From the NCBI GenBank assembly GCA_002269645.1, contig NIVC01003197.1, positions 48,433-112,432 on the forward strand: DNA of 64,000 nt. Reading direction: 5' to 3'. The translations under genes were made by a program, and so were the position numbers. A model generated the notes under the pieces. The model searched no databases and was not told the DNA's origin. It saw nothing but the letters and a program-made list of their open reading frames with translations. Source of the DNA: Macrostomum lignano (taxonomy: Eukaryota). Positions 14,933-63,838 of this stretch are shown here, piece after piece; positions within the stretch are counted from its first letter, which is position 1, and the number at the start of each line of letters is the position of its first letter.

Positions 14933-15711
14933 TAGGGATGTTGACCCCGGGAGTGCTCCCCGGGGAGCTTGTCGGGGAATACTCTCCGGGGAATTTAACC
15001 GGGGACCCTGGGGAGAAAAAATATGAAAAAATGCATTTGTAACTTAATTTTTGCCATTAAAATAAGAAACTGATTCACAGAAAGCTGATTGAAACTCTGT
15101 CTATGCTCTTTTACCGCATAATTGCTTATTTCAATGCATTACATGTATTTGAAACACAACACACGTTTGATTGTTTTTTCACTAATAAGTCATTCAATCA
15201 AGCAAATTGCACGTAGAAAAGAAACCCGTCAGGAAAAAGAAGCCTTACTGACTAGTGACTGCTGTGTTGGTCTGCGTTGACGGCTTGACGCAGGCGCAGC
15301 GCTGCGTCATGCGTCAGGCACTGACGCATAGGGGGGTGTCATACATATACTCCCTATTAGACAAGGACAAAATGGTGATTTACATATATATGCAAGAAAT
15401 AAAATTCCGATTATAAAAACAGTCTCATTCATTAATTATCCTCTCACGAGCGTAGCTGTTTAGCATGCATTCCAACAAATGCACTTTTCCGATAAAGGTG
15501 CGCGCACGATTTCGTGATGCCACATTGTCAAATACAGTTTAAAAAAACATTGTTTAAAATTTTTACCCCTGCGCCTTGAACATGTAGTACAAAGCTTAAA
15601 TCAAAGTTTAAAAAATTCCACTTACAATCTAAGTGATCCGCCGTTTTAACTAATTTTTTCTTTTCACCGGGGTCCCCGATAAGATAATTCCCTAGGGAAT
15701 CGACATCCCTA
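14933..15711. mobile_element. Non-autonomous hAT-like element
   Basis: Ends TAGGGATGTTGA... / ...TCGACATCCCTA. Flanking TTCCCTTC at 14925-14932 and 15713-15720 (one extra base at the right junction). Subterminal CCCGGGGA-type motifs. Confidence 0.65.
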
Positions 15712-20186: not shown

Positions 20187-20382
20187 TGGCCTCGTGGGGA
20201 ATCGGTCAGGTATCACATAGGGCTCATAGCAATAGCTCACTAAGCAATGTAAATTCTTGGCATAGTAAATGATACTGCTGCATAAGTGCATTATAAATTA
20301 TCCCTGCTGCAGTTATTAATCATATTTATCCCATGCACTGGCTTGAAGCCTTGCGACTCGCCTCCGCCAGCCAGCGGCAGCC

Positions 20383-23300
20383 ATGAACAGCCGCCTCTTC
20401 ACTCACGCGCCCCCGGCTCACCTGATCTGCCGCGTCTGCCGCGGAGTTTATCGGGAGCCACGGGTCAACCAGTGCGGCCACACCCTGTGCAGCGGTTGCT
20501 ACACCCGCTTGCAGTTCGATCCCGCTGACCCGCAGCCATCTGTCTGCCCGCAGTGCGGCAGCGGCCTCGTGCCCGAGTCCTCCGTGCCGAACAGGTGCGG
20601 GCTTGGGACTTGAGTTTGTGTCAGATGGATTTCAGTTTGTGTCAGATGGATTTCAGTTTGTGTCAGATAGATTTCAGTTTGTGTCAGATGGATTTCAGTT
20701 TGTGTCAGATAGATTGTAGTTTGTCAGATAGATTGTAGTTTGTGTCAGATAGATTGTTGTTTGTGTCAGATAGATTGTAGTTTGTGTCATAGATTGAAGT
20801 TTGTGTCAGACAGATTGTAGTTTGTCAGATAGATTGTAGTTTGTGTCAGATAGATTGTAGTTTGTGTCAGATAGGTTGTAGTTTGTCAGATAGATTGTAG
20901 TTTGTGTCAGATAGATTGTAGTTTGTGTCATAGATTGAAGTTTGTGTCAGACAGATTGCAGTTTGTCAGATAGATTGTAGTTTGTGTCAGATGGATTTCA
21001 GTTTGTGTCAGATAGATTTCAGTTTGTGTCAGATAGATTGTAGTTTATGTCAGATAGATTGTAGTTTGTGTCAGATAGATTGTAGTTTCTGTCAGGCAAA
21101 TGGTAGTTTGTGTCTGTCAGGCAAATTGTGTCTGTCTGTAGTTTCTGTCAGGCAAATGGTAGTTTGTGTCAGATAGATTGTAGTTTGTGTCAGGCAAATA
21201 GTAGTTTGTGTCAGATAGATTGTAGTTTGTGTCAGGCAAATAGTAGTTTGTGTCAGATAGATTTCAGTTTGTGTCAGATAGATTGTAGTTTGTGTCAGAC
21301 AGATTGTAGTTTGTGTCAGACAGATTGTAGTTTGTGTCAGACAGATTGTAGTTTGTGTCAGACAGATTGTAGTTTGTGTCAGACAGATTGTAGTTTGTGT
21401 CAGACAGATTGTAGTTTGTGTCAGACAGATTGTAGTTTGTGTCAGATAGATTGTAGTTTGTGTCAGATGAATTTCAGTTTGTGTCAGATGGATTTTAGTT
21501 TGTCAGATAGATTGTAGTTTGTGTCAGACAGATTGTAGTTTGTGTCAGATAGATTGTAGTTTGTGTCAGGCAAATAGTAGTTTGTGTCAGATAGATTGTA
21601 GTTTCTGTCAGGCAAATGGTAGTTTGTGTCAGGCCAATAGTAGTTTGTGTCAGATAGATTTCAGTTTGTGTCAGACAGATTGTAGTTTCTGTCAGATAGA
21701 TTGTTGTTTGTGTCAGACAGATTGTAGTTTGTGTCAGATAGATTGTAGTTTGTGTCATGCAAATAGTATTTTCTGTCAGATAGATTGTTGTTTGTGTCAG
21801 ACAGATTGTAGTTTGTGTCAGACAGATTGTAGTTTGCGTCAGGCAAATAGTAGTTTCTGTCAGATTGCAGTTTGTGTCAGATAGATTGTAGTTTGTGTCA
21901 GACAGATTGTAGTTTGTGTCAGATAGATTGTAGTTTCTGTCAGGCAAATGGTAGTTTGTGTCAGATAGATTGTAGTTTGTGTCAGGCAAATAGTAGTTTG
22001 TGTCAGATAGATTGTAGTTTCTGTCAGGCAAATAGTAGTTTGTGTCAGATAGATTTCAGTTTGTGTCAGACAGATTTTAGTTTGTGTCAGCCAAATGCTA
22101 ATGTGTCAGGCAAATGGTAGTTTGTGTCAGGCAAATGCAAGTTTGTGTCAGGAAGATGCTAGTTTGTGTCATGCAGTTGGTGGTATCTGTCAGTCAGATT
22201 GTAGCTTGTACCAGGCATATTGTAGTTTCTACCAAGCAGATTGTAGTTGGTGTCAGGCAGATTGTAGTTTTGTGATAGACAGATTTTAGTTGGTGTCAGA
22301 CAGGTGGTAGTTGTGTCAGTCAGATTATAAATTTAGTTGCCAGGCAGATTGTAGTCGTGTCAGTTGGCCTGTAGTTTTTGTCACCCAGATCGCGGCTGTT
22401 TGCGTCAGAAAAATGTTGCATGTGTCAGAATTTTGATCAAGTATTAGCTAAACTATCGTCATGCATCCTTGGGTTTGTGCCAAACATGAAAAATGGTTTG
22501 CCTGACAACACAATAAATGGAAAGTCATTTGCGCAGTCCCAATAGACCATTCTATAATTCATCTTTGACGCATTGGCAGAGACATCAGCGAGGAGGTGGA
22601 GGAGCTGACCGTGCACTGCATCTACCATTTCAAGCTGACGCCCAGCCAGCAGGCGCAGGCGCAGTTCCTGCCGACCAGCCTGGACCTGACTGCGGACCCC
22701 AATGGCTGCAATGCCGAGCTGTCGCTGCGTGAGTACAGCTTTGTGTAGCTAGCTTTTCTCGTGTCACGTGACAGTGGCCAATGTCACTGATTAGGGAGCT
22801 CATAAAATACTAGATTGCGGAAATAAATTTCAGACTACTAACAGTAGGTTAGTAGTGCTTAACTGTATCATAAATTAACAGTTCTAAACTAGATTTCCTC
22901 GCCTGTCCTTCCCAACCTCGGCAGTGGATCTGGAGCAGCACATATCCTCTTGCGAATTCCGTCCGGCGCCGTGTCCCTTCGACACCGTCAACTGCAGGGG
23001 CTGCAGCCATCGGGACCTGCAGCGGCACGCTCAGGATTGCATCTTCCGCTTTCTGGGTGAGTGCTTTCTGGATGGGTGGCTTTTAGAGGTCAGGGGCAGG
23101 CTGTCCCACACTAAGCCATAGACTATTCCACACCAACCATAAACTACCCCACACCAACCATAAACTATCCCACACCAACCAAAGACTATCCGACACCAAC
23201 CAAAGACTACTCCACACCCTCCCGACACTATCGATAACCTAACCATAGACTATCACAGAATTCGTTTTCACCTGTTTCCAGAGCTCGCTCCACGGGAAAT

Positions 23301-26320: not shown

Positions 26321-28188
26321 GCTGCGCCAGCCGCTGCCGCCGCCTTAATAGAAAGTACTCTTGAGGCGCCCGCAGCGGCTCAGGAGGCGCCAGCAGCGGC
26401 TCAGAAGGCGCCAGCAGCGGCTCAGGAGGCGCCAGCAGCGGCTCAGGAGGCGCCAGCAGCGGCTCAGGAGGCGCCAACAGCGGCTCAGGAGGCGCCAACA
26501 GCGGCTCAGGAGGCGCCAGCATCTGACGAGAAGCCAGCAGTAACTTCATATCCAACAGCTGCATCAAAAGCCGTCACCGATGCAGCATCGGGCACCCTGG
26601 TGATGCTGGACCTGGAGACCACCGGGATGGAGGGCCGGCAGCGCATCACGGAGCTCGCCATGCTGGCTGTGCACACCTTCAACCTGCTTGAGGCGGCTGA
26701 GGCGGCCGCTGTTTCCGCCAGCCCGGTTGCTAATGGCAACGGAGACGCTGCTGGCGTCGGCTCGCAGCCGCCGAGAGCGTCGCGGCTTCCCCGCGTGATG
26801 AACAGCCTGTGCCTGGTGTTCCACCCCATGCAGCCAGTCCACCCGGCCGCCGCCGACCTGACGCGCCTTGACAACGTGGCTCTCGAGCGGCAGAAAGAGT
26901 TCGACAGGAACGCCGCCGCTCTGATTGACGCCTTCCTGAGCCGGCTGGAGCCTCCCGTCGTGCTGATGGCGCACAATGGGCTGCAGTTCGACTTCCCGCT
27001 GCTCAGGAGCGAGCTGGATGCTGTGGGGGTCAGGTGAGGTCACGGCGCTTTTTGACAAGGCTTTGGCCTAGCCCACCAACATACTACCCTACTGAATAGC
27101 CCACCATACTACTCACTAATTAGCCCACCATGCTACTCACTAATTAGCCCACCATACTACTCACTAAATAGCCCATACTACTCACTAAATAGCCCACCAT
27201 ACTACTCACTAAATAGCCCACCATACTACTCACTAAATAGCCCACCATACTACTCACTAAATAGCCCACCATACTACTCACTAAATAGCCCACCATACTA
27301 CTCACTAAATAGCCCACCATACTACTCACTAAATAGCCCACCATACTACTCACTAAATAGCCCACCATACTACTCACTAAATAGCCCACCATACTACTCA
27401 CTAAATAGCCCACCATACTACTCACTAAATAGCCCACCATACTACTTACTAAATAGCCCACCATACTACTCACTAAATAGCCCACCATACTACTCACTAA
27501 ATAGCCCACCATACTACTCACTAATTAGCCCACCATACTACTCACTAAATAGCCCACCATACTACTTACTAAATAGCCCACCATACTACTCACTAAATAG
27601 CCCACCATACTACTCACTAAATAGCCCACCATACTACTCACTAATTAGCCCACCATACTACTCACTAAATAGCCCACCATACTACTTACTAAATAGCCCA
27701 CCATACTACTCACTAAATAGCCCACCATACTACTCACTAAATAGCCCACCATACTACTCACTAAATAGCCCACCATACTACTCACTAAATAACCGCAAAT
27801 ACCGCTTACAAAAGAATCCTATCACACTACTTGCTAAATGCAGTAGTCCAGTCTTATTGCTCACTAAAAAAGGCGGCATGCTACTCACAAAATCCGCAGC
27901 CTGCAGTCTCGTCCGCTGTGCTGCGACTCCCTTCCTCTGTTTCGCAAGCTGGAGCCGCCCGGCAGTCGCTGCGGCCTCACAGAGCTGCACTTCCGCCTGG
28001 CGGGCTGGCGGCCTGAGGACGCCCACTCTGCCATCGAGGACTGCGCCAGCCTACTGCGGGTGCTGAGCTGCCGCCTGCCCGCTTGTCTGGACTGGGTGCG
28101 GCACCAGGCCGTGCCGTTCGACTCGGTGGCTCCCAAATATGTTGCTAAGCGGAGGCTGCCGCTGCCCGATTTTCCTTACAAGCTGTGA
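26321..28188 (+). CDS. TREX-like DEDDh 3'-5' exonuclease, unit A (start codon not in this exon)
   Basis: Exons 26321-27033 and 27900-28188 (phase 2). Exo[24 protein letters not shown], ExoII AHNGLQFDFPLL, CCDSLPLFR, ExoIII AHSAIEDC. N-terminal (E/K)AP(A/T)AAQ x7 (21-bp repeat, 26363-26509). Frame open from the acceptor at 26320 with no ATG until 26603. Confidence 0.88.
27070..27790. repeat. 24-bp minisatellite (TREX-A intron)
   Basis: Unit AGCCCACCATACTACTCACTAAAT. Confidence 0.95.
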
Positions 28189-28224
28189 GGGGTGCTGGAG
28201 TTTTCTCAAATAGCTGGGATTATT

Positions 28225-28560
28225 TATCTGGATCCAAATCCTCAGTTGCTTGGCCAGCCTCCCAGATCCCCAGTTGCTTGGCCAGCCTCCCAGATCCCCA
28301 GTTTCTGGGCCAGCCTCCCAGATCCCCAGTTTCTGGGCCAGCCTCCCAGATCCCCAGTTTCTGGGCCAGCCTCCCAAATCCTCAGTTGCTGGGCCAGCCT
28401 CCCAGATCCTCAGTTGCTGGGCCAGCCTCCCAGATCCTCAGTTGCTGGGCCAGCCTCCCAGATCCTCAGTTGCTGGGCCAGTCTCCCAGATCCTCAGTTG
28501 CTGGACCAGCCTCCCAGATCCCCAGTTGCTGGGCCAGCCTCCCAGTTCCTCAGTTGCTAG
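28225..28560. repeat. 28/29-bp minisatellite immediately after TREX-A
   Basis: Unit CCCAGATCCTCAGTTGCTGGGCCAGCCT. Confidence 0.9.
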
Positions 28561-29209
28561 GCAGCCTCCCAGAGTGTCAGTTGCACTACCAGTCCCAGGT
28601 TTCTCACCCGAGTTCGTGTTAGGTCACAGACCCTTATCTGTTCTTTTTTATCCATTTTATCAGTAATGTACATATTACATTTTTACATTAAGAACACAAA
28701 ACTGACCTTGCTTTACCTAACAGATTGCTTTTTGAGTTGCATGCTAATGATGTTTTTTCTTATCTACCGCACTTTTGTGCTGTCAACTCTATTAATTTCT
28801 ATTATTATGTTTTTAATCTAAATCTGTATGAGGCACATAGTTTGTTAGTATTGCGCGATTTTTAATATTTGAGTAATCATTTTTAACAAACAAATTTTGC
28901 CTTCTTGGACTTTTGTGTTGTCATAATTTTCTATTAACTTTTAGCTACAAGCTTATTGCACTTTTGTGCAAAAATGATTTATTATAATACCATTTTACCT
29001 GCTACCTTCTTATCGAAGATTGCTTCTGATTGTTGTATAAAGAATTATGAATATTATCTTTACAGTGTACAGTGTAAATATGGATTAATTCAGTTTAAAT
29101 TATAGCTGTTTACTGATTACTACTAATAGATTTTTATGCATCTGACCCAGATGTATGAAGACAGTGAGCTTGTTCTTGTTTGTGTTTGAGTCAGCCTCTT
29201 TTTTATGAC

Positions 29210-29800
29210 GGGTGTGTGAGTCAGGCAAGAAGGGTGAGATAACGGGTGTGAGTCAGGCAGGAAGGGTGAGATACGGGTGTGAGTCAGGCAGGAAGGGTGA
29301 GATAACGGGTGTGAGTCAGGCAGGAAGGGTGAGATACGGGTGTGAGTCAGGCAGGAAGGGTGAGATAACGGGTGTGAGTCAGGCAGGAAGGGTGAGATAA
29401 CGGGTGTGAGTCAGGCAGGAAGGGTGAGATACGGGTGTGAGTCAGGCAGGAAGGGTGAGATAACGGGTGTGAGTCAGGCAGGAAGGGTGAGATAACGGGT
29501 GTGAGTCAGGCAGGAAGGGTGAGATACGGGTGTGAGTCAGGCAGGAAGGGTGAGATAACGGGTGTGAGTCAGGCAGGAAGGGTGAGATAACGGGTGTGAG
29601 TCAGGCAGGAAGGGTGAGATAACGGGTGTGAGTCAGGCAGGAAGGGTGAGATTTGAGAGTCAGGCAGGAAGGGTGAGATTTGAGAGTCAGGCAGGAAGGG
29701 TGAGATTTGAGAGTCAGGCAGGAAGGGTGAGATTTGAGAGTCAGGCAGGAAGGGTGAGATTTGAGAGTCAGGCAGGAAGGGTGAGATTTGAGAGTCAGGC
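29210..29800. repeat. 31/32-bp then 27-bp minisatellite before the TREX-B exon
   Basis: Unit GGGTGTGAGTCAGGCAGGAAGGGTGAGATAAC, changing to GAGAGTCAGGCAGGAAGGGTGAGATTT. Confidence 0.92.
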
Positions 29801-29815: not shown

Positions 29816-32800
29816 CAGCGACAAGCGTGGCGCACCCTGGCCGTGCTGGACCTGGAGACCACCGGCCTCTACCAGCCGCGCGTCACCGAGCTGGCTCTGC
29901 TGACCGCCGACCGGGCCGACCTGCTGCGCCGCGGCGGCACCGACCGGCTGCCCAGGGCGCTGAACCGGCTCTGCCTGCTGTTCAACCCCGGCTGCGAGGT
30001 GACGCCCTCGGCCGCGAACATCACCGGCTTGCACGGCGCCTGCCTGCGGTCTCAGCCGGCTTTCGACTCTGCGTCCGTGCGGCTGCTTGGCGCCTTCGTG
30101 CGGCGGCTCAACCAGCCGGTGCTGATGGTGGCGCACAATGGGGCCAGGTTCGACTTCCCGCTGCTCCAGGCTGAGCTCAGGCTGGCCTCGGCTGCCGCCG
30201 CTGGCTGCCCCGCCACGGCTGACGCGGCAAATTGTCTCGGTAGCGTGCTGTGCTCCGACTCGCTGCCTGCGCTTCGGGAGCTGCAGCTGCGGCCGGGTGC
30301 GGATGCTCTGTGAGTCTGAGCTGTTGCTGTCTGTCTGTCAGTGTCTGTCTTCCTGCCTGCCTGCCTGCCTGCCTGTCTGTCTGTCTCTGTCTGTCTGTCT
30401 GTCTCTGTCTGTCTGTCTGTCTCTGTCTGTCTGTCTGTCTGTGTCTGTCTGTCTGTCTGTCTGTCTGTTTGCCTGTCTGCCTGCCTGTCTGTCTGTCTGT
30501 CTGTCTGTCTGTCGGTCTCCCGTATAAAACGAAACGGTCACAAAAAGGGGCTGTGACCGTTCCACTTGTTACCGTGGTCTGTAATGCTTGTGACCGTTTA
30601 TTGTGACCGTTCATGTTCATGATAATAAGGTAACATGATACCGTTCATAGTTACCATATATGTGACCGTTTGTTCAGGGTCACATGTTACTGATCAATGT
30701 TACCGTATTTTGTGACCGTTTGTTTAGGGTCACATGTTACCGATCAATGTTACCGTATTTTGTGACCGTTTGTTTAGGGTCACATGTTACCGATCAATGT
30801 TACCGTATTTTGTGACCGTTTGTTTAGGGTCACATGTTACCGTTCAATGTGACCGTATTTTGTGACCGTTTGTTTATGGTCACATGTTACCGTTCAATGT
30901 GACCGTATTTTGTGACCGTTTGTTTAGGGTCACATGTTACCGTTCAATGTGACCGTATTTTGTGACCGTTTTGCTTACGGTAACTATGTTACTGTTTACT
31001 GTTACCATATTTTGTGACCGTTTTGTGATCTTGTGTGTTTTTTCTGACTATCAACCAACAGTATTATAATGTGCAAATAAGTAACAGGAATACAAATCAG
31101 CAGTAATATATTAGATGTGAAGTAACCAGTAATTGCGGCAATTGAGCTTTATATACGCAAAGCGCGCTATTATTAAAATGCATTATTATATGGTACATAG
31201 CGATCGCAGAAGTGCGCCAAAAAGAAGTAGTTGAATTAGTGGGACATCGCAGAAGTGCGCCAAAAAGAACTAGTTGAATTAGTGGGACATCGCAGAAGTG
31301 CGCCAAAAAGAACTAGTTGAATTAGTGGGACATCGCAGAAGTGCGCCAAAAAGAACTAGTTGAATTAGTGGGACATCGCAGAAGTGCGCCAAAAAGAACT
31401 AGTTGAATTAGTGGGACATCGCAGAAGTGCGCGACCAAAAGTTAAGCAGTTTTAGAAACCCATTGTACTGCGACGTTTAGGTTTAGTTTAGCTTTGTTTA
31501 GTTTAGCACAATGATATGTTGCATACACAAATTTCTCCCTCCCACTCTCTCCATTTTCTTTAATTATTCCCGATAAGAACAGAAAAAGCCCAGTAAATAA
31601 TAAAATGCCCGAAATGGCTGCATTTCAGTCTGGTACACTTCGACTCATGGATTTGCAGATGGATGAGAGGCTGCAGCTTCGTCGTCATTGTGATCTCCGT
31701 TGTCGCCAACGTTGGCGTCCTCATCATCGGCATCGATGTCGATCGTCGCCACCTCATTTCCGCTGGGTGCCAATTTGAGCGATTTTTGTAGTTTTCGCGC
31801 AGTACAGAATCCAGTGCGCTTAAACACGCCGGCATACTTTCTCTCCGGAATTTGGTTGGGCAACTGCAGGCCTTCAATAAACGCCTTAATGGCGAATTTT
31901 TTTCTCTTTGACACTTCCGCCTTTGGTGGCGGACCAGTTTTTGTCGACCTACGTCCCGTGTAAGAGCAGGTCGTAAGCTCGTCGTCCGTGAAAATTGCTA
32001 GGTACAAGGTCCGAAGCAATTTATCTGCGTCGGTACTCCTGTAACCTCCCTTGACATAGGCGGACACGGCATACTTTATCTTTGCGTAGTCGGTGGCCGA
32101 CACGACGACGTCGGGACAGCGCGCTGTCAAGGACCTCGTCTCGGGCTCACGTTTCCGCTGATTCAATGACGACATTCGGATCTGAGCGCGCAGGTCCATG
32201 TCGTCCAGCAACGGAGCTGCAGACGAGGCGGCCGCAGAAGCGCCACCACCAGCAGTCGTACTGCTGCTGCTAATCGTGTCAGCAACGCAATCTACGTAGA
32301 TGGCGGTTGTGAAGTAGCTTCGCCGGTAGATGGCGGTTGTGAAGTAGCTTCGCCGGTAGATGGCGGTTGTGGAGTACCTTCGCTACCGATGTCGTCGTCT
32401 GGATGACGGCGCTTATTACCACGATTCGTCTGTGGATTTCCAATGGCGGCGCCCATTGCAGTCGTTCCAGATTGCAACCATTGTTGTCGCCTTTGAAATA
32501 GAAGCTGCACTGTCTTGCGTTCTCGAAATCGTTTCACTCTTAAACGATTCATAATGGCGCGGCGTTGCTGGTCTTCCATGATAGAGATTTTTGTTCTTAA
32601 TGATTCTTATCCTCTGCAAAAGTGGCAAACGTTCATGAGAAATTAGTCAGTTGCTTCGTGGGTTACCGTCACTTCTCCTTATATACTGATTTGAAAGAGA
32701 ACGTATCCCTGGGCATAGGTAATAAATTTGCTTCCCTATTCATAACTATCACTTGTCCATACCTGACTATATATTACTGGGTATCCATGTGACCTATTTC

Positions 32801-33256
32801 AGGAGAGGCTACTCTGTAAAATTGTAAAGTATAAATTCAGGCAACAATAACACGTGCGTCACGCCGCACTCAAATTAAGCAACATAGTAGCAGCCTATTA
32901 TGCAATGATGACGACAACAGTTGGTAGAAAGCGACAAGTAGTAAACTCCACAACAGAACAAAACGGTCACAAAATACGGTAACATTGATCGGTAACATGT
33001 GACCCTGAACAAAACGGTCACAAAATACGGTAACATTGATCGGTAACATGTGACCCTTAACAAAACGGTCACACAATACGGTAACATTGAACAGTAACCT
33101 TGTTACCCCGAACTAAACAGTCACAAATACGGTAAAAAATGGCAACTGGTGACCGTAACGGTAAAAAACACGGTAACAGCCCTCTTTTTGTGACCGTTTC
33201 GTTTTATACGGGTCTGTCTGTCTGTGTCTGTCTGTCTGTTTGCCTGTCTGCCTGCC

Positions 33257-33306
<50 letters not shown>

Positions 33307-33316
33307 CCTGCCTGCC

Positions 33317-33373
<57 letters not shown>

Positions 33374-33764
33374 CGATCTCTTAGTGTCTGTCTTTCTGCC
33401 TGTGCCTGTCTGTCTGTCTGCATGGTTAGTATCCGTCTGTCTCTGCTATTTTAATCATCCAACTTACACCGAGCGCACCAACCAATCTGCTTCCACCAGG
33501 TTCGCCGAGCCCCTAAAGCAAGGAAAGCCGCAGGTGAGGTTCAGCCTGCAGCAGCTGTACAGCCAGGCATTCAGCGGCGAGGAGCCGCCTGGTAGTCACA
33601 GCGGCCTCGGCGACTGCGAAGCCCTGCTGCGGCTGCTGCTGTTCCGCCTTCCCGACTGCCTGCCACTGCTGGAGGCCGCGGCGGCGCCCTTCGAGACCGT
33701 GGCGCCCGCCAAGCTGCATGTCGAGGCCGCAGCGGCCGCCGCTTCCTCTGCGGCTGCTAATTGA
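29816..33764 (+). CDS. TREX-like DEDDh 3'-5' exonuclease, unit B
   Basis: Exons 29816-30309 and 33500-33764 (phase 2, CT|G). Exo[24 protein letters not shown], Exo[30 protein letters not shown], Exo[11 protein letters not shown]. 5' end uncertain (possible 13-nt exon 29151-29163). Confidence 0.88.
30519..33212. mobile_element. 2.7-kb non-autonomous TIR DNA transposon (CCC ends, CMC/EnSpm-like) in the TREX-B intron
   Basis: 28-bp perfect TIR CCCGTATAAAACGAAACGGTCACAAAAA at both ends. Subterminal 50-bp tandem repeats (x6 left, inverted x2-3 right). Flanking TCT/TCT inside a (TCTG)n tract. Internal 43-bp tandem array at 31203-31431. Confidence 0.85.
31645..32579 (-). CDS. Transposon cargo ORF with BEN-domain-like region, one apparent frameshift (~311 aa if corrected)
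   Basis: ORF 32579-32292 ([22 protein letters not shown]...) overlaps ORF 32211-31645, whose frame is open back to ~32385; one missing C near 32295 joins them. [45 protein letters not shown] fits the BEN pattern LL..LFT.EEL...S.TG....K...IK..V (recognised by eye). Confidence 0.6.
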
Positions 33765-35214: not shown

Positions 35215-38200
35215 ATGGGCCGCCGCAAGCGCAACATAGCGGAGGCCAAGGACCTCTACGACAACTCCAAGGAGTCCAACGCCCTGTTTGAGAAGTACTA
35301 CACGGCCCAGGGCATGCTGCCCGAGGCTGAGTGGCCGGCCTTCATGACCGCCATGCGGGAGGGCCTGCCTGTCACATTCCGAATCACCGGTTTCCGTGGT
35401 CACAGCCAGAGTCTGCTCAAGCTGCTGCGCACTCGCTACCTGGAGGACCTGCTCAGCCTGACTGACATTCGACCGCCTGAGCCGCTGCCCTGGTATCCGA
35501 GTGAGCTGGGGCGGCAGGGGATGGAGGAGCCAGTCTCACTGGGAGTCACTCAGATCGCCTACTAACAAGTAGCGAGAGCAGGATGTGAAGATCATCTCAT
35601 GCATGTAGCTTAAAGTTTGTATCTTGCAGAAAGATAGGATGGATTTTCCATGGATTTTCCATTTAACGACGAGAATTTCTAGTGGTATTGTAATAATACT
35701 AATTGATTACACCTGCCCTATGGGCAGATGTGCAACCGACAGCTCAGCCGCAGCTATTGCACGGCGCATCTGAAGATCCATTTTACAGCTAAGTGAACTG
35801 AAGCAATGCAGAGTTAAGTGTCTTGCTCGAGGACACAAATTGTTCCAAGTGGGTCGAGAATCGAACCCCCGACCTTTCAGTCGTGAATCCTAAGCTACAA
35901 TCCCCCTCGTACCCCGCCTAGAGGTATAAAATTAAGAACTAGACTAAAGAATCCTCCGCGACCTCGCGTGACCCCGCAGGCGGCATGGCCTACCAGCTGC
36001 ACACGAACCGGCTGGCTATTCGCAAAATCAACGAGCTCCAGCGATTGCACAGCTTCCTGGTGACCGAGACCGAGACCGGCCACATCACCCGGCAGGAGGC
36101 CGTCTCCATGGTGCCGCCGCTGGTGCTGGACGTGCGCTCCAGCCACCGGGTGCTGGACATGTGCGCCGCGCCCGGCTCCAAGACCGGCCAGATGCTCGAG
36201 CTGCTGCACCGTGGCGACGACAGCGAGGCTGGACGGAGCTCTGGCGAGCTGCCCGACGGTTGGTGCTGGATGAGCAACTTTTTAGCGTCAGTCTGATTGC
36301 ACAAGTCCGACACAAGTCAGTGCATAGTGTCTGACACAAGTCTCAGTGCATAGTGTCTGACACACGTCAATGCATAGTGTCTGACACAAGTCTCAATGCA
36401 CAGCGTCTGACACAAGTCTCAGTGCATAGGTGTCTGACACAAGTCTCAGTGCATAGTGTCTGACACAAGTCTCAGTGCATAGTGTCTGACACAAGTCTCA
36501 ATGCACAGCGTCTGACACAAGTCTCAGTGCATAGGTGTCTGACACAAGTCTCAGTGCATCGTGTCTGACACAAGTCTCAATGCACAGCGTCTGACACAAG
36601 TCTCAGTGCATAGTGTCTGACACAAGTCTCAGTGCATAGTGTCTGACACAAGTCAATAAATAGTGTCTGACACAAGTTAATGAATAGTGTCTGACACAAG
36701 TCTCAATGCACAGCGTCTGACACAAGTCTCAGTGAATAGTGTCTGACACAAGTCTCAGTGCATAGTGTCTGACACAAATCTCAGTGCATAGTGTCTGACA
36801 CACGTCAATGCATAGTGTCTGACACAAGTCAGTGCATAGTGCCATTACAGTGTCTGACACAAGTTACTACCTAATTGTCTGACAAGTCAGTACAGTGTTT
36901 GACAAGACAGTACAGTGTCTGACACAAGTCAGTACAATGTCTGACACAAGTCAGTACAGTGTCTGACAAGTCAGTACAGTGTCCGACACGAGTCAGAGTC
37001 AAAGTTCCTGACACAAGTCCTCACAATGTCTGACACAAGCTTCCCGCCAATTGCAGGCCTAATCGTGGCAAATGACGTGGACCAGCGCCGGGCCTACATG
37101 ATGGTGCACCAGCTCAAGAGGCTGCAGAGCCCCTGCTTTGTGGTCTGCGCCCACGACTCCAGCGTGTTCCCCCGGCTCCGCCTGGAGCCCGACGGCCCGC
37201 CGCTGCTGTTCGACCGCGTGCTGGCCGACGTCCCCTGCTCTGGCGACGGCACGGCGCGCAAAAATCCCGGCGTCTGGCGCCGCTGGAAGCCCGGGCACGC
37301 CAACAACCTGCACCTGACTCAGGCCAAGATACTCAAGCGAGGACTCGAACTGCTCGCTGTTGGCGGCCGGCTTGTGTACTCAACCTGCAGCCTGAACCCT
37401 GTAGAGAATGAGGCTGTTGTGGGCAAGCTGCTGCTGGAGACTGAGGGCTCTGTGGAACTGGTGAGCTGCTGGGGCTGGCTAACCGCAGCCTCTTGGTAGG
37501 TTTGAGTAATAACTAAGCAGGTTTTCGAATAAGATTTTGTGATAGCTGAGTGAGAGTCTGAGATATCACAGTGAGATTATGTGATATCTGAGTGGGATTC
37601 TGGGATATCTGAGTGGGATTCTGGGATATCTGAGTGGGATTCTGGAATAGCTGAGTGGGATTCTGGGATATCTGAGTGGGATTATGGGATATCTGAGTGG
37701 GATTCTGGGATATCTGAGTGAGATTATGGGATATCTGAGTGAGATTATGGGATATCTGAGTGAGATTATGGGATATCTGAGTGGGATTCTGGGATATCTG
37801 AGTGAGATTATGGGATATCTGAGTGGGATTCTGGGATATCTGAGTGGGATTCTGGGATATCTGAGTGAGATTCTGGGATATCTGAGTGGGATTCTGGGAT
37901 ATCTGAGTGAGATTATGGGATATCTGAGTGGGATTCTGGGATATCTGAGTGAGATTATGGGATATCTGAGTGGGATTCTGGGATATCTGAGTGAGATTAT
38001 GGGATATCTGAGTGGGATTCTGGAATATCTGAGTGAGATTATGGGATATCTGAGTGAGATTATGGGATATCTGAGTGAGATTATGGGATATCTGAGTGAG
38101 ATTCTGGGATATCTGAGTGGGATTCTGGGATATCTGAGTGAGATTATGGGATATCTGAGTGAGATTATGGGATATCTGAGTGAGATTATAGGATATCTGA

Positions 38201-41111
38201 GTGGGATTCTGGGATATCTGAGTGGGATTCTGGGATATCTGAGTGGGATTCTGGGATATCTGAGTGAGATTATGGGATATCTGAGTGAGATTATGGGATA
38301 TCTGAGTGAGATTATGGGATATCTGAGTGGGATTCTGGGATATCTGAGTGAGATTATGGGATATCTGAGTGGGATTCTGGGATATCTGAGTGGGATTCTG
38401 GGATATCTGAGTGAGATTATGGGATATCTGAGTGGGATTCTGGGATATCTGAGTGAGATTATGGGATATCTGAGTGAGATTATGGGATATCTGAGTGGGA
38501 TTCTGGGATATCTGAGTGGGATTCTGGGATATCTGAGTGAGATTATGGGATATCTGAGTGAGATTATGGGATATCTGAGTGAGATTATAGGATATCTGAG
38601 TGGGATTCTGGGATATCTGAGTGGGATTCTGGGATATCTGAGTGGGATTCTGGGATATCTGAGTGGGATTCTGGGATATCTGAGTGGGATTCTGGAATAT
38701 CTGAGTGAGATTATGGGATATCTGAGTGAGATTATGGGATATCTGAGTGAGATTATGGGATATCTGAGTGGGATTCTGGGATATCTGAGTGAGATTCTGG
38801 GATATCTGAGTGGGATTCTGGGATATCTGAGTGGGATTCTGGGATATCTGAGTGGGATTCTGGGATATCTGAGTGGGATTCTGGGATATCTGAGTGGGAT
38901 TCTGGAATATCTGAGTGAGATTATGGGATATCTGAGTGAGATTATGGGATATCTGAGTGAGATTATGGGATATCTGAGTGGGATTCTGGGATATCTGAGT
39001 GGGATTCTGGGATATCTGAGTGGGATTCTGGGATATCTGAGTGGGATTCTGGGATATCTGAGTGGGATTCTGGGATATCTGAGTGAGATTATGGGAAATC
39101 TGAGTGAGATTATGGGATATCTGAGTGAGATTATGGGATATCTGAGTGAGATTATGGGATATCTGAGTGAGATTATGGGATATCTGAGTGAGATTATGGG
39201 ATATCTGAGTGAGATTATGGGATATCTGAGTGGGATTCTGGGATATCTGAGTGGGATTCTGGGATATCTGAGTGGGATTCTGGGATATCTGAGTGGGATT
39301 CTGGGATATCTGAGTGAGATTATGGGATATCTGAGTGGGATTCTGGGATATCTGAGTGGGATTCTGGGATATCTGAGTGGGATTCTGGGATATCTGAGTG
39401 AGATTATGGGATATCTGAGTGGGATTCTGGGATAGTTGAGTGGGATTGCGAGATTAATTCAGGTACTAAGATAAATTACAATAGGTTAAGGTTCAAATTC
39501 TTGAAATTGGTTGCTATGTACAATCGCCAGGTGGACGTCAGGCCCTTGCTGCCGGGCTTCAAATCTCTCCCGGGGCTGTCCAGCTGGAAGGTGATGGGCG
39601 CTAACGGCACGCTGTTTGAGAAGTACTCGGATGTGCCTGTGGGCCGCGACCACGCCTACCTGCGCCCGTCGTTCTTTGACGAAGGCTACAAAGACCTGCC
39701 GATGGAGCGCTGCATGCGGGTGCTGCCCCACCTGCAGGACACCGGCGGCTTCTTCGTTGCCGCGCTGGAGAAGCGGCGCCACCTGCCCTGGATGAACCCC
39801 GCCAAGTGGGACGCGGCGGCGGCCACAGCGGCTGCTGCGGATGCCTGCGCTCAGGATGGAGGCGCAGTTCAAGCGGCCACTGGAGATGGTAAGCCGGCAC
39901 TGCCGCTTGCAGCTGTTTCAGGCTGGCTCACTTTGGTGCCTGGTATGCTCTGTGATGTTTTAGTTTTAGGTGTCAGGTGTTATTGCCTATTAATGGTAGT
40001 GTCATGAGGTACAGGTTGTCAGCAGTGTCTGGTAAAGTTGTCAGATGCAGGCTGTCTTAGGGTCAGTTGTGTCGGGTGTAGTCGTCAAAAGTGTCAGTCA
40101 AAGTTGTCAATACTGTCAGGAGCAGCTGTCAATACTGTCAGGTGCAGCTGTCAATACTGTCAGGTGCAGCTGTCAATACTGTCAGGTGCAGCTGTCAATA
40201 CTGTCAGGTGCAGCTGTCAATACTGTCAGGTGCAGCTGTCAATACTGTCAGGCGCAGCTGTCAATACTGTCAGGTGCAGCTGTCAGCAGTGAGGCGCATC
40301 GGATCATTTCCCAAACATTCCCAGCCGCTCCAGCCGGTGATGCAGCAGCCGCAGACTCATCGGGGCGGCCGCAGTCGCCGAAGTCCAAGCGGCGCCGCTT
40401 CAACGAGGATCCGTTCCTGTTCATGGGCCCCGAGCACCCGGTGTGGCGCGGCATCTCCGAGACCTTCGGCATCGACAGCGGCCGGTTCCCCTGCGGCAAC
40501 GTGCTGTACCGCTGCGAGACCTCCAAGAAGCGGCACCTGTACCTGGTGAACGACTGCGCCAGGCGGCTGGTGCAGGGCAACCCGGAGCTCAAGACCGTCA
40601 ACATGGGCATCAAGATCTTCTCTGTGTGCGACGACGCCGAGTACAAAGGCTACAGGCCGCTGCAGGAGGGCCTGAGCCTGCTGGAGCCCTTCATCACCCT
40701 GCGCCGCATCCGGGTGCCCCGCTGCGATCTGCTGGTGCTGCTTGAGCACGAGCTGCCGTTCTCCGACCGGTTCACCGAGGCCACCAGGACGGCCTGGCGG
40801 CCCTGACTCTCGGCCCGGTCGTCATCGACTATCGGCGAGACGGCGAGGACGCCCAACAGCTGCCGGACGTGGACCTCTGCCTGGCCGGCTGGCGTGGCCG
40901 CACCACCCTGCGGGCGTACATGAACCGGCACGAGCGGCTGCACCTCACCCGCATGTGCGGAGTTGAAGATCTGGTTGAAATCCGCGGCAAAACTGCTGGC
41001 CAGGGCGACGGCGAGGGCGACGACGAGGACGGCCCGTCCGATGACGAGGAGGCTGTGGAGCCTCCGGCTGCGGCAGCGGCGGCCGATGGCAACGACGGGG
41101 AGGCGGAGTGA
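35215..41111 (+). CDS. NSUN2: RNA cytosine-C5 methyltransferase NSUN2/Trm4, 5 exons, one apparent 1-nt frameshift near 40797
   Basis: Exons 35215-35500, 35980-36258, 37057-37460, 39531-39888, 40325-41111. Motifs [65 protein letters not shown]. The C-terminal [20 protein letters not shown] lies in a shifted frame. Confidence 0.93.
35706..35906 (-). mobile_element. tRNA-derived CORE-like SINE, internally deleted copy (NSUN2 intron 1)
   Basis: Reverse complement matches the 62315 copy: B box GGTTCGATTCTC, GTGTCCTCGAGCAAGACACTTAAC, CTGTAAAATGG, 3' GCAATAGCTGCGGCTGAGCTGTCGGTTGCACATCTG. Confidence 0.85.
36300..37040. repeat. ~24-26-bp minisatellite (NSUN2 intron 2)
   Basis: Unit GTGTCTGACACAAGTCTCAGTGCATA and variants. 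Confidence 0.9.
37555..39445. repeat. 21-bp two-variant minisatellite, about 90 copies (NSUN2 intron 3)
   Basis: Units GGGATATCTGAGTGGGATTCT and GGGATATCTGAGTGAGATTAT interleaved. Confidence 0.96.
40095..40290. repeat. 22-bp minisatellite (NSUN2 intron 4)
   Basis: Unit CTGTCAATACTGTCAGGTGCAG. Confidence 0.9.
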
Positions 41112-41342
41112 CTCGGGACTCGTATACGAAATTTTAAACAAAATACTGCTAAGCCAATGCCTTGTGGTTCATCTCTATTTTGGCGAATTGCATTTTTTTA
41201 TTCAAAATTAAACATCATAATTATCAGCGTGAGCTGCTGAGTTTGGGTGACTCCGTGACTATGAAATCTGCACTGCAGTCTCATTGCCTTCTTCTGTCTG
41301 TGCCTTCTAAGACTGTGAGCACCTGGCTGGACACCTGCTTTA

Positions 41343-41712
41343 CACCTGAGCTATTCAGCCAGTCACCTGAGCTATTCAGCCAGTCACCTGAGCTATTCAG
41401 CCAGTCACCTGAGCTATTCAGCCACACACCTGAGCTATTCAGCCATTCACCTGAGCTATTCAGCCAGACACCTGAGCTATTCAGCCAGTCACCTGAGCTA
41501 TTCAGCCACACACCTGAGCTATTCAGCCACACACCTGAGCTATTCAGCCATTCACCTGAGCTATTCAGCCAGTCACCTGAGCTATTCAGCCAGTCACCTG
41601 AGCTATTCAGCCAGTCACCTGAGCTATTCAGCCAGTCACCTGAGCTATTCAGCCAAACACCTGAGCTATTCAGCCAGTCACCTGAGCTATTCAGCCAGTC
41701 ACCTGAGCTATC
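41343..41712. repeat. 21-bp minisatellite downstream of NSUN2
   Basis: Unit CACCTGAGCTATTCAGCCAGT, about 17 copies. Confidence 0.92.
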
Positions 41713-43086
41713 GCATGGCATTCAAATGCAGTTAAAATCACAGCAAACCGTCGCTTCCGTGATGCCAAGATTATTTCCGCCTGTTGAACTTGCAGCAGGC
41801 TCGCTCAGTCGGTTTAGCTTCGGTCACGCGAATTCCTTTTTTCAAGCTCGGAGCGAAATTGAACCAGTAAGAGGTTGCTACGTCCAAGTGGCACTCGGAA
41901 ACCTCGGAACTTTTCTCCGCAATTTTAACTGCCAGTCGATATTGACTTGAGCCACTTTTATTTATTGCGAACACTACCTCGCATTTTTGCTAGAAAAAAT
42001 TATAATCAAGATTTGACGTCATTTTGCTCCATAGAAGGAAAAGTCCCACTGCAGGGTGCAATTATTATTTTCAGCAATGGAAAATATTTGACCGCCTGGC
42101 TTCACCCGATCAGAGAAGTCCAGGCGTTACGCTTAGCACAGGAACAATGCCCTCCCCCCCTTGAAATTTAAGAGGCTCGCTTGCTTATCGATACTCTCCA
42201 TATCGGCTCCCCTGACTGCACGTCCGCTTGCTGCATGCAGCTGTATCAGGCCCAGGCTGGACCAACACTGCCCCCCCCCCCCCAGCTCGTCAGGCTCGGC
42301 CAAGTCAAGTGTGAGCAACTGCAGGCAGACTGCAAGGGGACCACGGGAAGAGAATTTGGTTTGGAATTGTAAAGCAGGGCGAGAATACAATGCGTAAAAT
42401 CCGCTGTAAAAATGAGTAGAGTGGGGTCGGGAGAGCAGGCAGGAGCTGGGGGTTGGCGGGGGGCTCGCGAGCCGCAATTGGCTGCTGGCTCTGCACTCCG
42501 ACAGGTTTCCAAGGGGCGACGGGAGGAAGGGGGGATCCGGGCTGCAAGGGTAAAAAAATGCCGAGTCGGTGGGCTGCTGGGTGCGGACCCATTGTTCCAC
42601 ACGACTCTGCTACTTTGAGATCTGCGCTTGCCCGATCGGCTCCGTCAACTACTGATGAAGCTTTCTGCAGCTTCCAGCTTAATTTCTTGCGCTTGAACTC
42701 TTCCAGGTAACTGAGGGTGTCTGCTTCAGTACAGGTGAGTCTGGGATGGGGATTCGTTGCTAGCAGGAGCAAGGATTTCTGGTTAGTTGCTAGAGAACAT
42801 TTAGCAAAACATTTTTTCTAGGAATCAAAATGGGAATTCAAATTAATTATTTTTACTGATTTTTCCTCCTAGTGGTCAGGTGTGTTAACCAGAGCAGGTA
42901 GGTAGCAGCAATACCTGCTGAAGTACTTTACCGCTCAATATAAAATCCCTTGGGCAGAAAACGGTAAAAAAACCTGCGCACGTGTGCAGCTGCATTTTCT
43001 GCTCATCCCTGACCTCTCGCTCCTTGCCTTGCATGCAGCCGAATCGCCTTCAGCACCTGCAGCCCTACTGAGATTGAGGCCGCGCC

Positions 43087-63838
<20,752 letters not shown>

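What the first reader, a model, noticed from the sequence alone, without database searches (positions are those of the whole stretch)
30519..33212. Non-autonomous CCC-ended TIR transposon carrying a BEN-domain-like gene, inside the TREX-B intron
Seen: perfect 28-bp TIRs, arrays of 50-bp subterminal repeats in inverted orientation at the two ends, a 43-bp internal array, and a single antisense cargo gene but no transposase. The cargo has a basic N-terminal helix ([17 protein letters not shown]), 30-bp coding repeats, a BEN-like core and an acidic tail. Known: CAC/CCC ends, 2-4-bp TSDs and subterminal repeats typify the CACTA-Mirage-Chapaev superfamily; BEN domains are DNA-binding/repressor modules of BANP, Insensitive, BEND proteins and poxvirus E5R. 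Inference: the protein could be a TnpA-like accessory factor that binds the element's own GTGACCG/GTTACCG repeats, a self-regulating module mobilised in trans. Perfect TIRs suggest recent activity.
Basis: partly seen in the sequence, partly recalled or inferred. Interest (0 to 1): 0.7.

Follow-up and report, generated by a model that had tools for sequence, protein, structure and literature searches.

The report
Broken flatworm transposon carrying BEN-like gene
This is a real but internally deleted copy of a young cut-and-paste transposon family of the flatworm Macrostomum lignano whose copies carry a single BEN-like DNA-binding-type gene instead of a transposase; it is an interesting variant of an ordinary kind of mobile element, not a new kind.

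Summary
Window 30519-33212 is a 2,694-bp element with perfect 28-bp terminal inverted repeats (TIRs). It has inverted arrays of 50/51-bp subterminal repeats, a 43-bp internal array and one antisense gene. It sits in an intron of a TREX1-like gene.

New here:
- The organism is Macrostomum lignano.
- Four more-or-less complete relatives were compared: the window copy and three Mlig_3_7 loci. They represent three independent insertions, each with an exact 3-bp target-site duplication (TSD): TCT, TAA, CTA.
- The reference copy is 4,172 bp. Its only long ORF is an intronless gene for a 657-aa protein (PAA55211.1, UniProt name "BEN domain-containing protein").
- The "frameshift near 32295" is a 1,039-bp internal deletion that removes residues 96-441 and shifts the frame.
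- No copy encodes a transposase.

The BEN assignment is probable but not secured. Pfam gives E=0.0025, which is below the gathering score. Both AlphaFold models were low-confidence and Foldseek found nothing.

The CACTA-Mirage-Chapaev (CMC) assignment is not secured either. The 3-bp TSD and subterminal arrays fit, but the ends are CCC..GGG, not the CAC..GTG that the sources I could read describe.

Binding of the protein to its own GTKACC repeats is untested inference. No autonomous partner could be searched for with these tools.

The parts
30516..30518 (.). Target-site duplication, left copy (TCT)
   Evidence: Only n=3 gives identical flanks, TCT on both sides. Removing the element and one TCT restores the (TGTC)n register of the flanking microsatellite.
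30519..30546 (+). Terminal inverted repeat at the 3' side of the cargo gene: CCCGTATAAAACGAAACGGTCACAAAAA
   Evidence: 28/28 complementary to 33185-33212. The same 28-mer ends the elements in L001, L002 and L003.
30553..31023 (+). Subterminal repeat region: degenerate motifs, then 7.9 x 50-bp units (30629-31023). Each unit carries two TGTGACCGT sites and a quasi-palindrome GGTCACATGTTACC.
   Evidence: There are 23 GTKACCG motifs on the + strand here.
31203..31432 (.). Internal 43-bp tandem array (5.3 copies, 99%), downstream of the gene's 3' end
   Evidence: The same array has 6.3 copies in L002 and 13.4 in L001.
31645..32295 (-). 3' part of the cargo gene (216 codons plus stop), out of frame with the start codon. 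It equals residues 442-657 of the intact 657-aa protein P0003. It contains the BEN-like core (about 31777-32121; Pfam-aligned part 31879-32022) and the acidic tail.
   Evidence: 99% identity to P0001/P0003; BEN E=0.011 and 0.0025.
32295..32296 (-). Junction of a 1,039-bp internal deletion (346 codons + 1 nt) relative to the intact copy in L002. This is the cause of the premature TAG at 32294-32292.
   Evidence: blastn of the elements and inspection of the junction; protein alignment.
32292..32579 (-). 5' part of the cargo gene: ATG, basic N-terminal segment, and 30-bp (10-aa) repeats at 32296-32383. It encodes 95 aa and then a stop.
   Evidence: Identical to residues 1-95 of P0003.
32677..32686 (-). 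TATA-like box (GTATATAAGG on the minus strand), about 100 nt upstream of the ATG. A candidate poly(A) signal ATTAAA lies on the minus strand at about 31559-31564.
   Evidence: Read directly from the sequence. Not tested.
32956..33135 (-). Subterminal repeat array at the 5' side of the gene: 3.5 x 51-bp units, inverted relative to 30629-31023
   Evidence: (I1-I21). The intact copies have 10.5 to 13.5 units here.
33185..33212 (-). Terminal inverted repeat at the 5' side of the gene
33213..33215 (.). Target-site duplication, right copy (TCT)
30311..33473 (+). Host intron of the TREX1-like gene 'TREX-B' (splice sites inferred). Apart from the element it is almost entirely (CTGT)n microsatellite (30327-30518 and 33212-33420).
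   Evidence: Exons 29843-30310 and 33474-33764 match TREX1 chains at E=2.6e-27. Microsatellites.

Best explanation
SHOWN. The feature is a dead, internally deleted copy of a young family of cut-and-paste-type TIR DNA transposons of Macrostomum lignano. The family makes 3-bp target-site duplications. Its reference-length copy (4,172 bp, locus L002) carries one intronless gene for a 657-aa protein and no transposase. That protein has, in order: a basic N-terminus, acidic/Ser-rich repeats, a small middle domain, a coiled coil, a BEN-like all-helical domain and an acidic tail. The window copy lost 1,039 bp from the middle of the gene. It can encode only a 95-aa N-terminal peptide.

INFERRED. The elements move only when a transposase is supplied in trans by a partner element that has not been found. 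Each end carries dozens of GTKACC half-sites. These are polar and mirror-symmetric between the two ends, and one further copy sits inside each TIR. They are the protein-binding platform that marks the ends.

My preferred reading is that the family's own BEN-like protein is a sequence-specific DNA-binding factor that acts on these sites, either as an end-bridging accessory factor or as a repressor. This would be analogous to TnpA of En/Spm or the Myb-like protein of Harbinger. The window copy would then be a pure cis-substrate that depends on intact copies for both proteins.

My confidence in the identity part is about 0.9, and in the BEN-binds-own-repeats part about 0.35.
For: Structure and significance.

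Family:
- An exhaustive phmmer search found PAA66355.1 of M. lignano, 99% identical to the window's second frame.
- Cluster mates are PAA55211.1 (657 aa, intact) and PAA69591.1.
- Their loci carry the same 28-bp TIRs, with element lengths of 7,965, 4,172 and 4,033 bp.
- The TSDs are TAA, CTA and CTA. L002 and L003 share flanks at 597 of 600 positions, so they are one insertion on duplicated DNA. The window TSD is TCT.

No transposase: the L002 element has one 657-aa ORF and nothing else above 217 aa, and that ORF is an out-of-frame read of the gene's own repeats. The extra ORFs in L001 have no transposase signature.

Deletion.

Youth: 99.1% identity across the gene, with 6 nucleotide differences in 936 coding positions.

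The gene is not an obvious recent capture. No other relative was found among 1.84 billion representatives or in the 5.8-billion-protein index.

Transcription: GenBank models of Mlig_3_7 derive from an RNA-seq-guided transcriptome that excluded transcripts overlapping annotated repeats (PMC5730564).

BEN: Pfam E=0.011 and 0.0025, the UniProt name and all-helical predictions.

Precedent that a BEN-like fold reads transposon ends: DBD1 of the Tn3 transposase (PMC9579193).
Against: - The BEN hit is below Pfam's gathering score.
- Both structure predictions have low confidence (pLDDT 45 and 54.5). Foldseek and PDB sequence searches gave nothing.
- Nothing links the protein to the repeats except co-residence.
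- The subterminal sites could equally be bound by the unknown transposase.
- Only one of four copies has an intact gene.
- The few substitutions (3 synonymous, 3 non-synonymous) give no power to detect selection.
- Neither the copy number in the genome nor an autonomous partner could be examined.
- No empty site was recovered. The only support for clean insertion is the restored microsatellite register.
Confidence: 0.5

Rival explanations
1. Passenger-gene reading. The element is a non-autonomous TIR transposon as described, but the BEN-like gene is cargo with no role in transposition. It could be a captured or hitch-hiking host-type regulator, as in Pack-MULEs, gene-carrying CACTA elements or the TET/JBP-carrying fungal transposons. 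The GTKACC arrays are bound only by the partner's transposase.
For: - DNA transposons that carry extra non-transposase genes are well documented (for example PMC12730594).
- The gene has its own TATA-like promoter.
- L001 shows that the family tolerates or acquires foreign DNA: a 2.9-kb unique insert with a weak CtIP/SAE2-like ORF.
- There is no evidence of DNA binding to the repeats.
Against: - No donor gene or any paralogue outside the element was found in very large protein collections that include the M. lignano proteome.
- Every copy examined carries the gene in the same position and orientation.
- The reference-length element consists of little else.
Confidence: 0.33
2. One reading: the family belongs to the CACTA-Mirage-Chapaev (CMC/EnSpm) superfamily, with the BEN-like protein as the TnpA analogue.
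For: - An exact 3-bp TSD without a fixed sequence at three insertions.
- Long subterminal arrays of a short motif in both orientations.
- A non-transposase gene.
- A TSD range of 2-5 bp is reported for the CMC(T) group.
Against: - The termini are CCC..GGG. The sources I could read describe 'invariable' 5'-CAC..GTG-3' for Chapaev, CAC..GTG for EnSpm and 5'-CA..TG-3' for the clade.
- There is no transposase to test for the C(2)C and H(3-4)H motifs.
- From my own knowledge, not checked here, Zator and Academ are also described with about 3-bp TSDs.
Confidence: 0.3
3. The 657-aa protein is itself the recombinase, a transposase of an undescribed type, so that L002-type copies are autonomous.
For: It is the only gene in every copy. 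The family is young and has at least three independent insertions.
Against: No DDE/RNase-H, HUH, tyrosine- or serine-recombinase signature was found in Pfam. About half of the protein is low-complexity or coiled coil. The only domain hit is to a DNA-binding module.
Confidence: 0.03
4. The feature is not a mobile element. It is a segmental duplicate or a satellite-associated palindromic structure.
For: The genome is extremely rich in tandem repeats and duplicated blocks.
Against: The same ends occur in three unrelated flanking contexts. Each has its own exact 3-bp direct duplication, which has chance about (1/64)^3. Homology stops exactly at the TIR tips.
Confidence: 0.01

Closest known systems
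En/Spm (CACTA) elements with TnpA, and their internally deleted dSpm/I derivatives
   Same: A 3-bp TSD. Several hundred bp of subterminal repeats built from a short motif in direct and inverted orientation at both ends. An element-encoded non-catalytic DNA-binding protein, proposed here by analogy. Non-autonomous copies arise by internal deletion and move in trans.
   Different: The ends are CCC..GGG, not CACTA/CAC..GTG. No TnpD-like transposase is known for the family. The protein is BEN-like and has no similarity to TnpA. Even the longest 'clean' copy lacks a transposase.
PIF/Harbinger two-protein system (DDE transposase plus Myb/SANT-like DNA-binding protein)
   Same: A 3-bp TSD. A separate DNA-binding protein is thought to bring the transposase to subterminal sites. 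Derivatives that keep only part of the coding capacity exist.
   Different: The Harbinger TSD is typically TWA. Here the TSDs are TCT, CTA and TAA. The accessory protein is BEN-like rather than Myb/SANT. The terminal sequence is different.
BEN-solo factors (Drosophila Insensitive, Elba1/2) and vertebrate BEND/BANP proteins
   Same: A single C-terminal BEN-type helical domain follows a coiled coil or disordered region. Those proteins bind short, often palindromic sites as dimers. Each 50-bp unit here contains a quasi-palindrome, GGTCACATGTTACC.
   Different: Similarity is only sub-threshold (18.4 bits). No orthology. The gene is carried inside a mobile element. DNA binding is untested.
DBD1 of the bacterial Tn3-family transposase TnpA
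   Same: A BEN-like fold that reads the inverted repeat of its own transposon (PMC9579193).
   Different: DBD1 is part of the transposase itself, in bacteria. The similarity was found by structure and there is no detectable sequence relation. The structure is not established for the flatworm protein.
Gene-carrying DNA transposons (Pack-MULEs; TET/JBP-carrying hAT, Harbinger, EnSpm and KDZ elements of fungi)
   Same: TIR elements with an additional non-transposase gene (PMC12730594).
   Different: The elements described in PMC12730594 also encode a transposase, and Pack-MULEs (my own knowledge) carry recognisable host gene fragments. Here the gene is intact, has no detectable donor, and is the only gene.

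Membership tests
Class II TIR (cut-and-paste type) DNA transposon, non-autonomous copy | Terminal inverted repeats | tested here: met
   28/28 nt. The sequence is unique to the two ends within the window.
Class II TIR (cut-and-paste type) DNA transposon, non-autonomous copy | Target-site duplication of constant length at independent insertions | tested here: met
   TCT, TAA and CTA, each exactly 3 bp, at three unrelated loci.
Class II TIR (cut-and-paste type) DNA transposon, non-autonomous copy | Multiple copies whose homology ends at the TIR tips | tested here: met
   Four copies representing three insertions. There is no homology outside the elements.
Class II TIR (cut-and-paste type) DNA transposon, non-autonomous copy | Absence of a transposase gene in the copy | tested here: met
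   ORF lists and Pfam scans.
Class II TIR (cut-and-paste type) DNA transposon, non-autonomous copy | Empty (unoccupied) site, or an autonomous partner with the same ends | not testable with these tools
   The M. lignano genome cannot be searched by DNA here. The TREX-A paralogue has a different intron. Only the restored microsatellite register supports clean insertion.
CACTA-Mirage-Chapaev (CMC / EnSpm) superfamily | [quoted passage not shown] | not testable with these tools
   No transposase in any copy, and no partner is retrievable.
CACTA-Mirage-Chapaev (CMC / EnSpm) superfamily | Termini 5'-CAC..GTG-3' (CA..TG) | tested here: not met
   The ends are CCCGTAT..ATACGGG in all copies. The hallmark is as stated in PMC4079192 and PMC12730594.
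CACTA-Mirage-Chapaev (CMC / EnSpm) superfamily | TSD of 2-4 (5) bp | tested here: met
   3 bp in all three insertions.
CACTA-Mirage-Chapaev (CMC / EnSpm) superfamily | Subterminal repeat arrays (characteristic of CACTA, not exclusive to it) | tested here: met
PIF/Harbinger superfamily | 3-bp TSD with TWA consensus | tested here: not met
   The length fits, but only 1 of 3 TSDs (TAA) is TWA. The sample is small.
PIF/Harbinger superfamily | Second ORF with a Myb/SANT-like domain | tested here: not met
   No Myb/SANT hit. The only domain hit is BEN.
BEN domain (Pfam PF10523) | Score at or above the Pfam gathering threshold (23.2 bits) | tested here: not met
   16.4, 15.2, 15.0 and 18.4 bits, with E from 0.029 down to 0.0025. 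It is the best hit apart from a coiled-coil match in the two full-length proteins. Profile positions 1-48 of 76 align.
BEN domain (Pfam PF10523) | Compact all-alpha fold superposable on solved BEN domains | tested here: inconclusive
   AlphaFold single-sequence models are helical throughout but have low confidence (pLDDT 45 and 54.5). Foldseek against the PDB gave no match with E<1.
BEN domain (Pfam PF10523) | Recognition by an independent annotation source | tested here: met
   UniRef names all three cluster members 'BEN domain-containing protein'. This is an automatic annotation whose basis is not visible here.
BEN domain (Pfam PF10523) | Sequence-specific DNA binding | not testable with these tools
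   Needs experiment.

The most novel reading that the evidence does not exclude
The family is the first eukaryotic DNA transposon whose own protein is a BEN-domain end-binding factor. The 657-aa protein would recognise the GTKACC sites, including the quasi-palindrome GGTCACATGTTACC, in the subterminal arrays and TIRs. It would either bridge the ends for a partner transposase or repress the element. If so, BEN would join THAP, BED, CENP-B/pogo and Myb/SANT(Harbinger) as a transcription-factor DNA-binding domain with a transposon-borne form. That would give a concrete route for the scattered occurrence of BEN domains in animals and their viruses, and would echo the BEN-like DBD1 of Tn3 transposases.
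Probability: 0.25. Interest if true: 0.7.

Novelty: new variant of a known kind. Interest (0 to 1): 0.4.

Why it matters
Several DNA-binding domains of animal transcription factors came from transposon proteins: THAP from P elements, BED from hAT, CENP-B from pogo and Myb/SANT from Harbinger. I know of no established origin for BEN domains (my own knowledge). Full-text searches found no paper describing a transposon-encoded BEN protein in eukaryotes.

A young, transcribed TIR family in a transgenesis-capable flatworm would make the question testable. Its only gene is BEN-like, and its ends carry dozens of candidate binding sites.

Practically, the family was apparently not in the classified repeat library used to annotate Mlig_3_7. 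Its copies are therefore annotated as ordinary protein-coding genes. They should be flagged as transposon genes.

The window copy itself is a dead derivative. It probably has little effect beyond enlarging a TREX1-like intron from roughly 0.47 kb to 3.2 kb.

Tried and rejected
- Word-index protein search with the window's 216-aa frame found nothing. It missed even the 99%-identical P0001, which the exhaustive search then found. Negative results from that index are therefore weak.
- Two further index searches, with the full protein and with the low-complexity-trimmed 406 aa, returned only the protein itself.
- P0002, the second hit of the exhaustive search, is a 2,318-aa repeat-translation artefact (LDNKLLRAVYLGI repeats). 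I dismissed it.
- AlphaFold was run on the 188-aa ORF and on the 120-aa core. Both models had low confidence, and the Foldseek PDB hits were meaningless.
- phmmer against PDB sequences found no BEN chain.
- An exact scan of JGI metagenome contigs for the TIR gave 0 hits. I did not scan the bacterial and viral collections, as they are irrelevant to a flatworm.
- Exact-product look-ups of the window's two truncated ORFs found no record. I could therefore not test whether the deletion derivative itself has spread.
- The tandem paralogue TREX-A cannot serve as an empty site. It is 41% identical and its intron holds a different minisatellite.
- I tested whether the 2.9-kb insert in the L001 copy hides a transposase or is a nested TIR element. 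It has no terminal inverted repeats, no transposase domain and no similarity to the BEN protein.
- A bZIP-like reading of the basic N-terminus (N-x7-R spacing) was rejected. There is no Pfam bZIP hit and no leucine zipper follows.
- A dN/dS comparison between copies rests on only 6 differences and is uninformative.
Yuan & Wessler 2011 is not held, and the papers I could read say CAC or CA.
Full report
OBSERVATION

The window segment 30519-33212 (2,694 bp) is bounded by a perfect 28-bp inverted repeat, CCCGTATAAAACGAAACGGTCACAAAAA. It extends to 32 nt with one mismatch (I22). The 28-mer occurs nowhere else in the 64-kb window even with 3 mismatches allowed, and no shuffle produced a match.

- Inside the left end lie 7.9 units of 50 bp (30629-31023, 92% match).
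- Inside the right end lie 3.5 units of 51 bp (32956-33135), in the opposite orientation.
- A 43-bp array (31203-31432, 5.3 copies, 99%) and a 30-bp coding repeat (32296-32383) are also present.
- 37 of the 39 GTKACCG/CGGTMAC motifs of the whole window lie in the element.
- The 14-mer TTTTGTGACCGTTT occurs 12 times, all in the element, against 0.04 expected. One copy lies in each TIR, in the orientation opposite to the adjacent array.
- Each 50-bp unit carries two TGTGACCGT sites and a quasi-palindrome, GGTCACATGTTACC (read).

The only substantial coding capacity is on the minus strand. A 95-codon ORF runs from the ATG at 32579 to a TAG at 32294-32292. A second frame is open from 32295 to the stop at 31645.

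HOST CONTEXT

The exons on either side are 29843-30310 and about 33474-33764. Joined, they match TREX1 crystal-structure sequences at E=2.6e-27 over both halves of the exonuclease. The splice sites (GTGAGT at 30311; AG at 33472-33473, phase 0) are inferred from the sequence.

The element lies antisense in this intron, in the middle of a roughly 400-bp (CTGT)n microsatellite. A second TREX-like gene upstream (26603-27016 and 27958-28134, 41% identical) has a different minisatellite in the corresponding intron. It gives no empty-site comparison.

WHAT THE GENE IS

The word-index search found nothing. The exhaustive phmmer search of 1.84 billion representatives found one real relative, P0001. It is 616 aa and 99% identical to the window's second frame over its residues 401-616.

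P0001 is PAA66355.1 of Macrostomum lignano, which identifies the organism. UniRef calls it "BEN domain-containing protein". Its 90% cluster also holds PAA55211.1 (P0003, 657 aa) and PAA69591.1 (P0004, 338 aa).

P0001 and P0003 begin with the same [22 protein letters not shown]... as the window's ORF1. P0004 is an N-terminally truncated model that starts at an internal methionine. In the alignment the window has residues 1-95 and 442-657 of P0003 and lacks 96-441.

At the DNA level the window copy lacks 1,039 bp (346 codons + 1 nt) relative to the L002 copy. The junction lies between window 32296 and 32295 and has no clear microhomology.

THE FAMILY

The three GenBank proteins map to contigs of assembly Mlig_3_7. 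Each gene lies between the same 28-bp TIRs.

| Copy | Position | Length | Flanking triplet | Note |
|---|---|---|---|---|
| L001 | 8857-16821 | 7,965 bp | TAA | 2.9-kb insert interrupts the gene |
| L002 | 9022-13193 | 4,172 bp | CTA | intact 657-codon gene |
| L003 | 8257-12289 | 4,033 bp | CTA | broken 5' part of the gene (model starts at an internal Met) |
| Window | 30519-33212 | 2,694 bp | TCT | 1,039-bp deletion |

L002 and L003 have virtually identical flanks (597/600). They are one insertion on duplicated DNA, as expected for the redundant DV1 assembly (PMC5730564). That leaves three independent insertions, each with an exact 3-bp TSD and no longer match. The chance of this is about (1/64)^3.

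- The L002 element has one intact, intronless 657-codon ORF and no other ORF of note.
- L001 has the same gene interrupted by a 2.9-kb unique insert.
- Only one of the four genes is intact.
- No copy has a transposase-like ORF or Pfam hit.
- Array lengths vary between copies: 3.5 to 13.5 units at the 5' side, 8 to 12 at the 3' side, and 5 to 13 units of the 43-bp array.
- The polarity of the GTKACC sites is the same in all copies.
- The window copy is 99.1% identical to L002 across the gene and 96.8% in the 5' arm. The family is therefore young.
- The GenBank gene models derive from an RNA-seq-guided transcriptome from which transcripts overlapping annotated repeats were removed, and unclassified repeat models were discarded. 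I infer that the gene is transcribed and that the family was not recognised as a transposon.

IS IT A BEN PROTEIN?

Pfam's BEN model is the only plausible domain hit:

- E=0.011 on the fused window protein;
- E=0.026 and 0.029 on P0001 and P0003;
- E=0.0025 (18.4 bits) on the isolated 120-aa core.

All align profile positions 1-48 of 76 to [25 protein letters not shown].... All are below the gathering score of 23.2 bits.

The two AlphaFold runs had no alignment depth, because no homologues exist. They gave helical but low-confidence models (pLDDT 45 and 54.5). Foldseek against the PDB returned nothing meaningful. phmmer against PDB sequences also found nothing.

I rate the BEN assignment at roughly 0.75. 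It rests on a statistically suggestive profile hit at the expected place, an all-helical prediction and UniProt's independent automatic name.

The rest of the protein comprises:

- a basic N-terminus, probably a nuclear localisation signal; a bZIP reading was rejected;
- acidic/Ser-rich 10- and 18-aa repeats;
- an unassigned beta-looking middle domain (YRYWVFEYAPEDGGRLGVYADKCVV...);
- a coiled coil, which gives a weak PUMA_CC hit;
- an acidic tail.

WHICH SUPERFAMILY?

An exact 3-bp TSD without a fixed sequence, together with long subterminal arrays, resembles CACTA/En-Spm. However, the sources I could read give 5'-CAC..GTG-3' as invariable for Chapaev (PMC4079192). They give CAC..GTG with a 3-bp TSD for EnSpm and 5'-CA..TG-3' for the wider clade (PMC12730594). 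This family ends CCC..GGG in every copy.

The Harbinger and Chapaev3 preference for TWA is met by only one of the three TSDs. Without a transposase the superfamily cannot be decided. I put CMC at about 0.3.

HOW IT MOST LIKELY WORKS

Shown:
- a TIR element family with 3-bp TSDs, recently active;
- all examined copies lack a transposase;
- the window copy is additionally broken.

Inferred:
- Mobilisation is in trans by an unfound partner.
- The dozens of polar GTKACC sites are the binding platform that defines the ends. Comparable roles are played by the AAACGG motifs of Ac, the 12-bp TnpA sites of En/Spm and the subterminal sites of Harbinger (established knowledge of those systems).

The single gene is retained in the same place in all copies. 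It has no detectable donor or paralogue elsewhere. It looks like a DNA-binding module of a family whose members bind short, often palindromic sites as dimers. For these reasons I favour the view that it is the family's own end-binding accessory factor or repressor. A BEN-like fold reading transposon ends has a bacterial precedent in DBD1 of the Tn3 transposase (PMC9579193).

The main rival, at about one third, is that the gene is simply cargo.

The window copy can make at most the 95-aa N-terminal peptide. It is a passive substrate, not a self-regulating module.

NOVELTY AND VERDICT

Its family context is now known, as are the exact lesion, the TSD length and the organism.

It is an ordinary kind of object, a deleted non-autonomous class II element, with an unusual coding content. 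Full-text searches found no report of a eukaryotic transposon-encoded BEN protein and none for Macrostomum. This is absence of evidence in a partial library.

I rate it a new variant of a known kind, with interest 0.4. The decisive steps are a genome-wide TIR search for copy number, empty sites and the autonomous partner, and a DNA-binding test of the BEN-like domain. Neither could be run here.

Noticed in passing
L001:10660-13575: One family copy has a 2.9-kb unique insert in the middle of the BEN-like gene. The insert has no terminal inverted repeats and no similarity to the other loci. It contains a 282-aa ORF (12157-13005) with a weak SAE2/CtIP C-terminal hit (E=0.0063, 18.0 bits against a cut-off of 19.8). 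An alternative in-frame N-terminus (MPKPSDATTKPKEKG...) reads into the rest of the BEN-like gene. The GenBank model splices the insert out as an intron. It could be captured host DNA or filler from gap repair.
   Followed up: partly
window 26603-27016 / 27958-28134 and 29843-30310 / 33474-33764: There are two tandem TREX1-like exonuclease genes, 41% identical. The homologous intron of each is filled by a different repeat. TREX-A has a 24-bp minisatellite x30 (27076-27791). TREX-B has (CTGT)n plus the transposon.
   Followed up: partly
window 17205-22031, 28185-28666, 29214-29787, 37684-39435, 41281-41950, 43633-45822, 47420-48730, 57700-58450: The density of highly regular micro- and minisatellites is exceptional, many with about 95% or more matches. 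They generate long spurious ORFs in several frames. Some interrupt genes such as the NSUN2-like (37026-37499 and 39501-40806) and ferlin-like (55786-58538) exons. This fits the published 15% simple and tandem repeat content of M. lignano (PMC5730564).
   Followed up: no
L001:8845-8868: The left flank of the L001 insertion (GGGACCGTATAA) resembles the start of the TIR that follows it (CCCGTATAAAA). It could be chance, a target preference for self-like sequence, or a remnant of an earlier end.
   Followed up: no
window 31203-31432; L002:12187-12459; L001:15365-15935: The 43-bp array just downstream of the gene varies from 5.3 to 13.4 copies between elements, yet stays 97-99% homogeneous. Its function is unknown. 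It lies between the presumed poly(A) site and the 3' subterminal array.
   Followed up: no
tool behaviour: The word-index protein search returned no hit for a query that is 99% identical over 216 aa to a protein in the same collection. Negative results from that tool should not be read as absence.
   Followed up: yes
L002:9022-9049 and L003:8257-8284: The 5' TIR of the duplicated L002/L003 insertion carries 2 and 1 substitutions respectively, while the 3' TIR is perfect. The two element copies are 97.5% identical although their flanks are more than 99% identical. This suggests faster change, or conversion and slippage, inside the repeat-rich element than around it.
   Followed up: no
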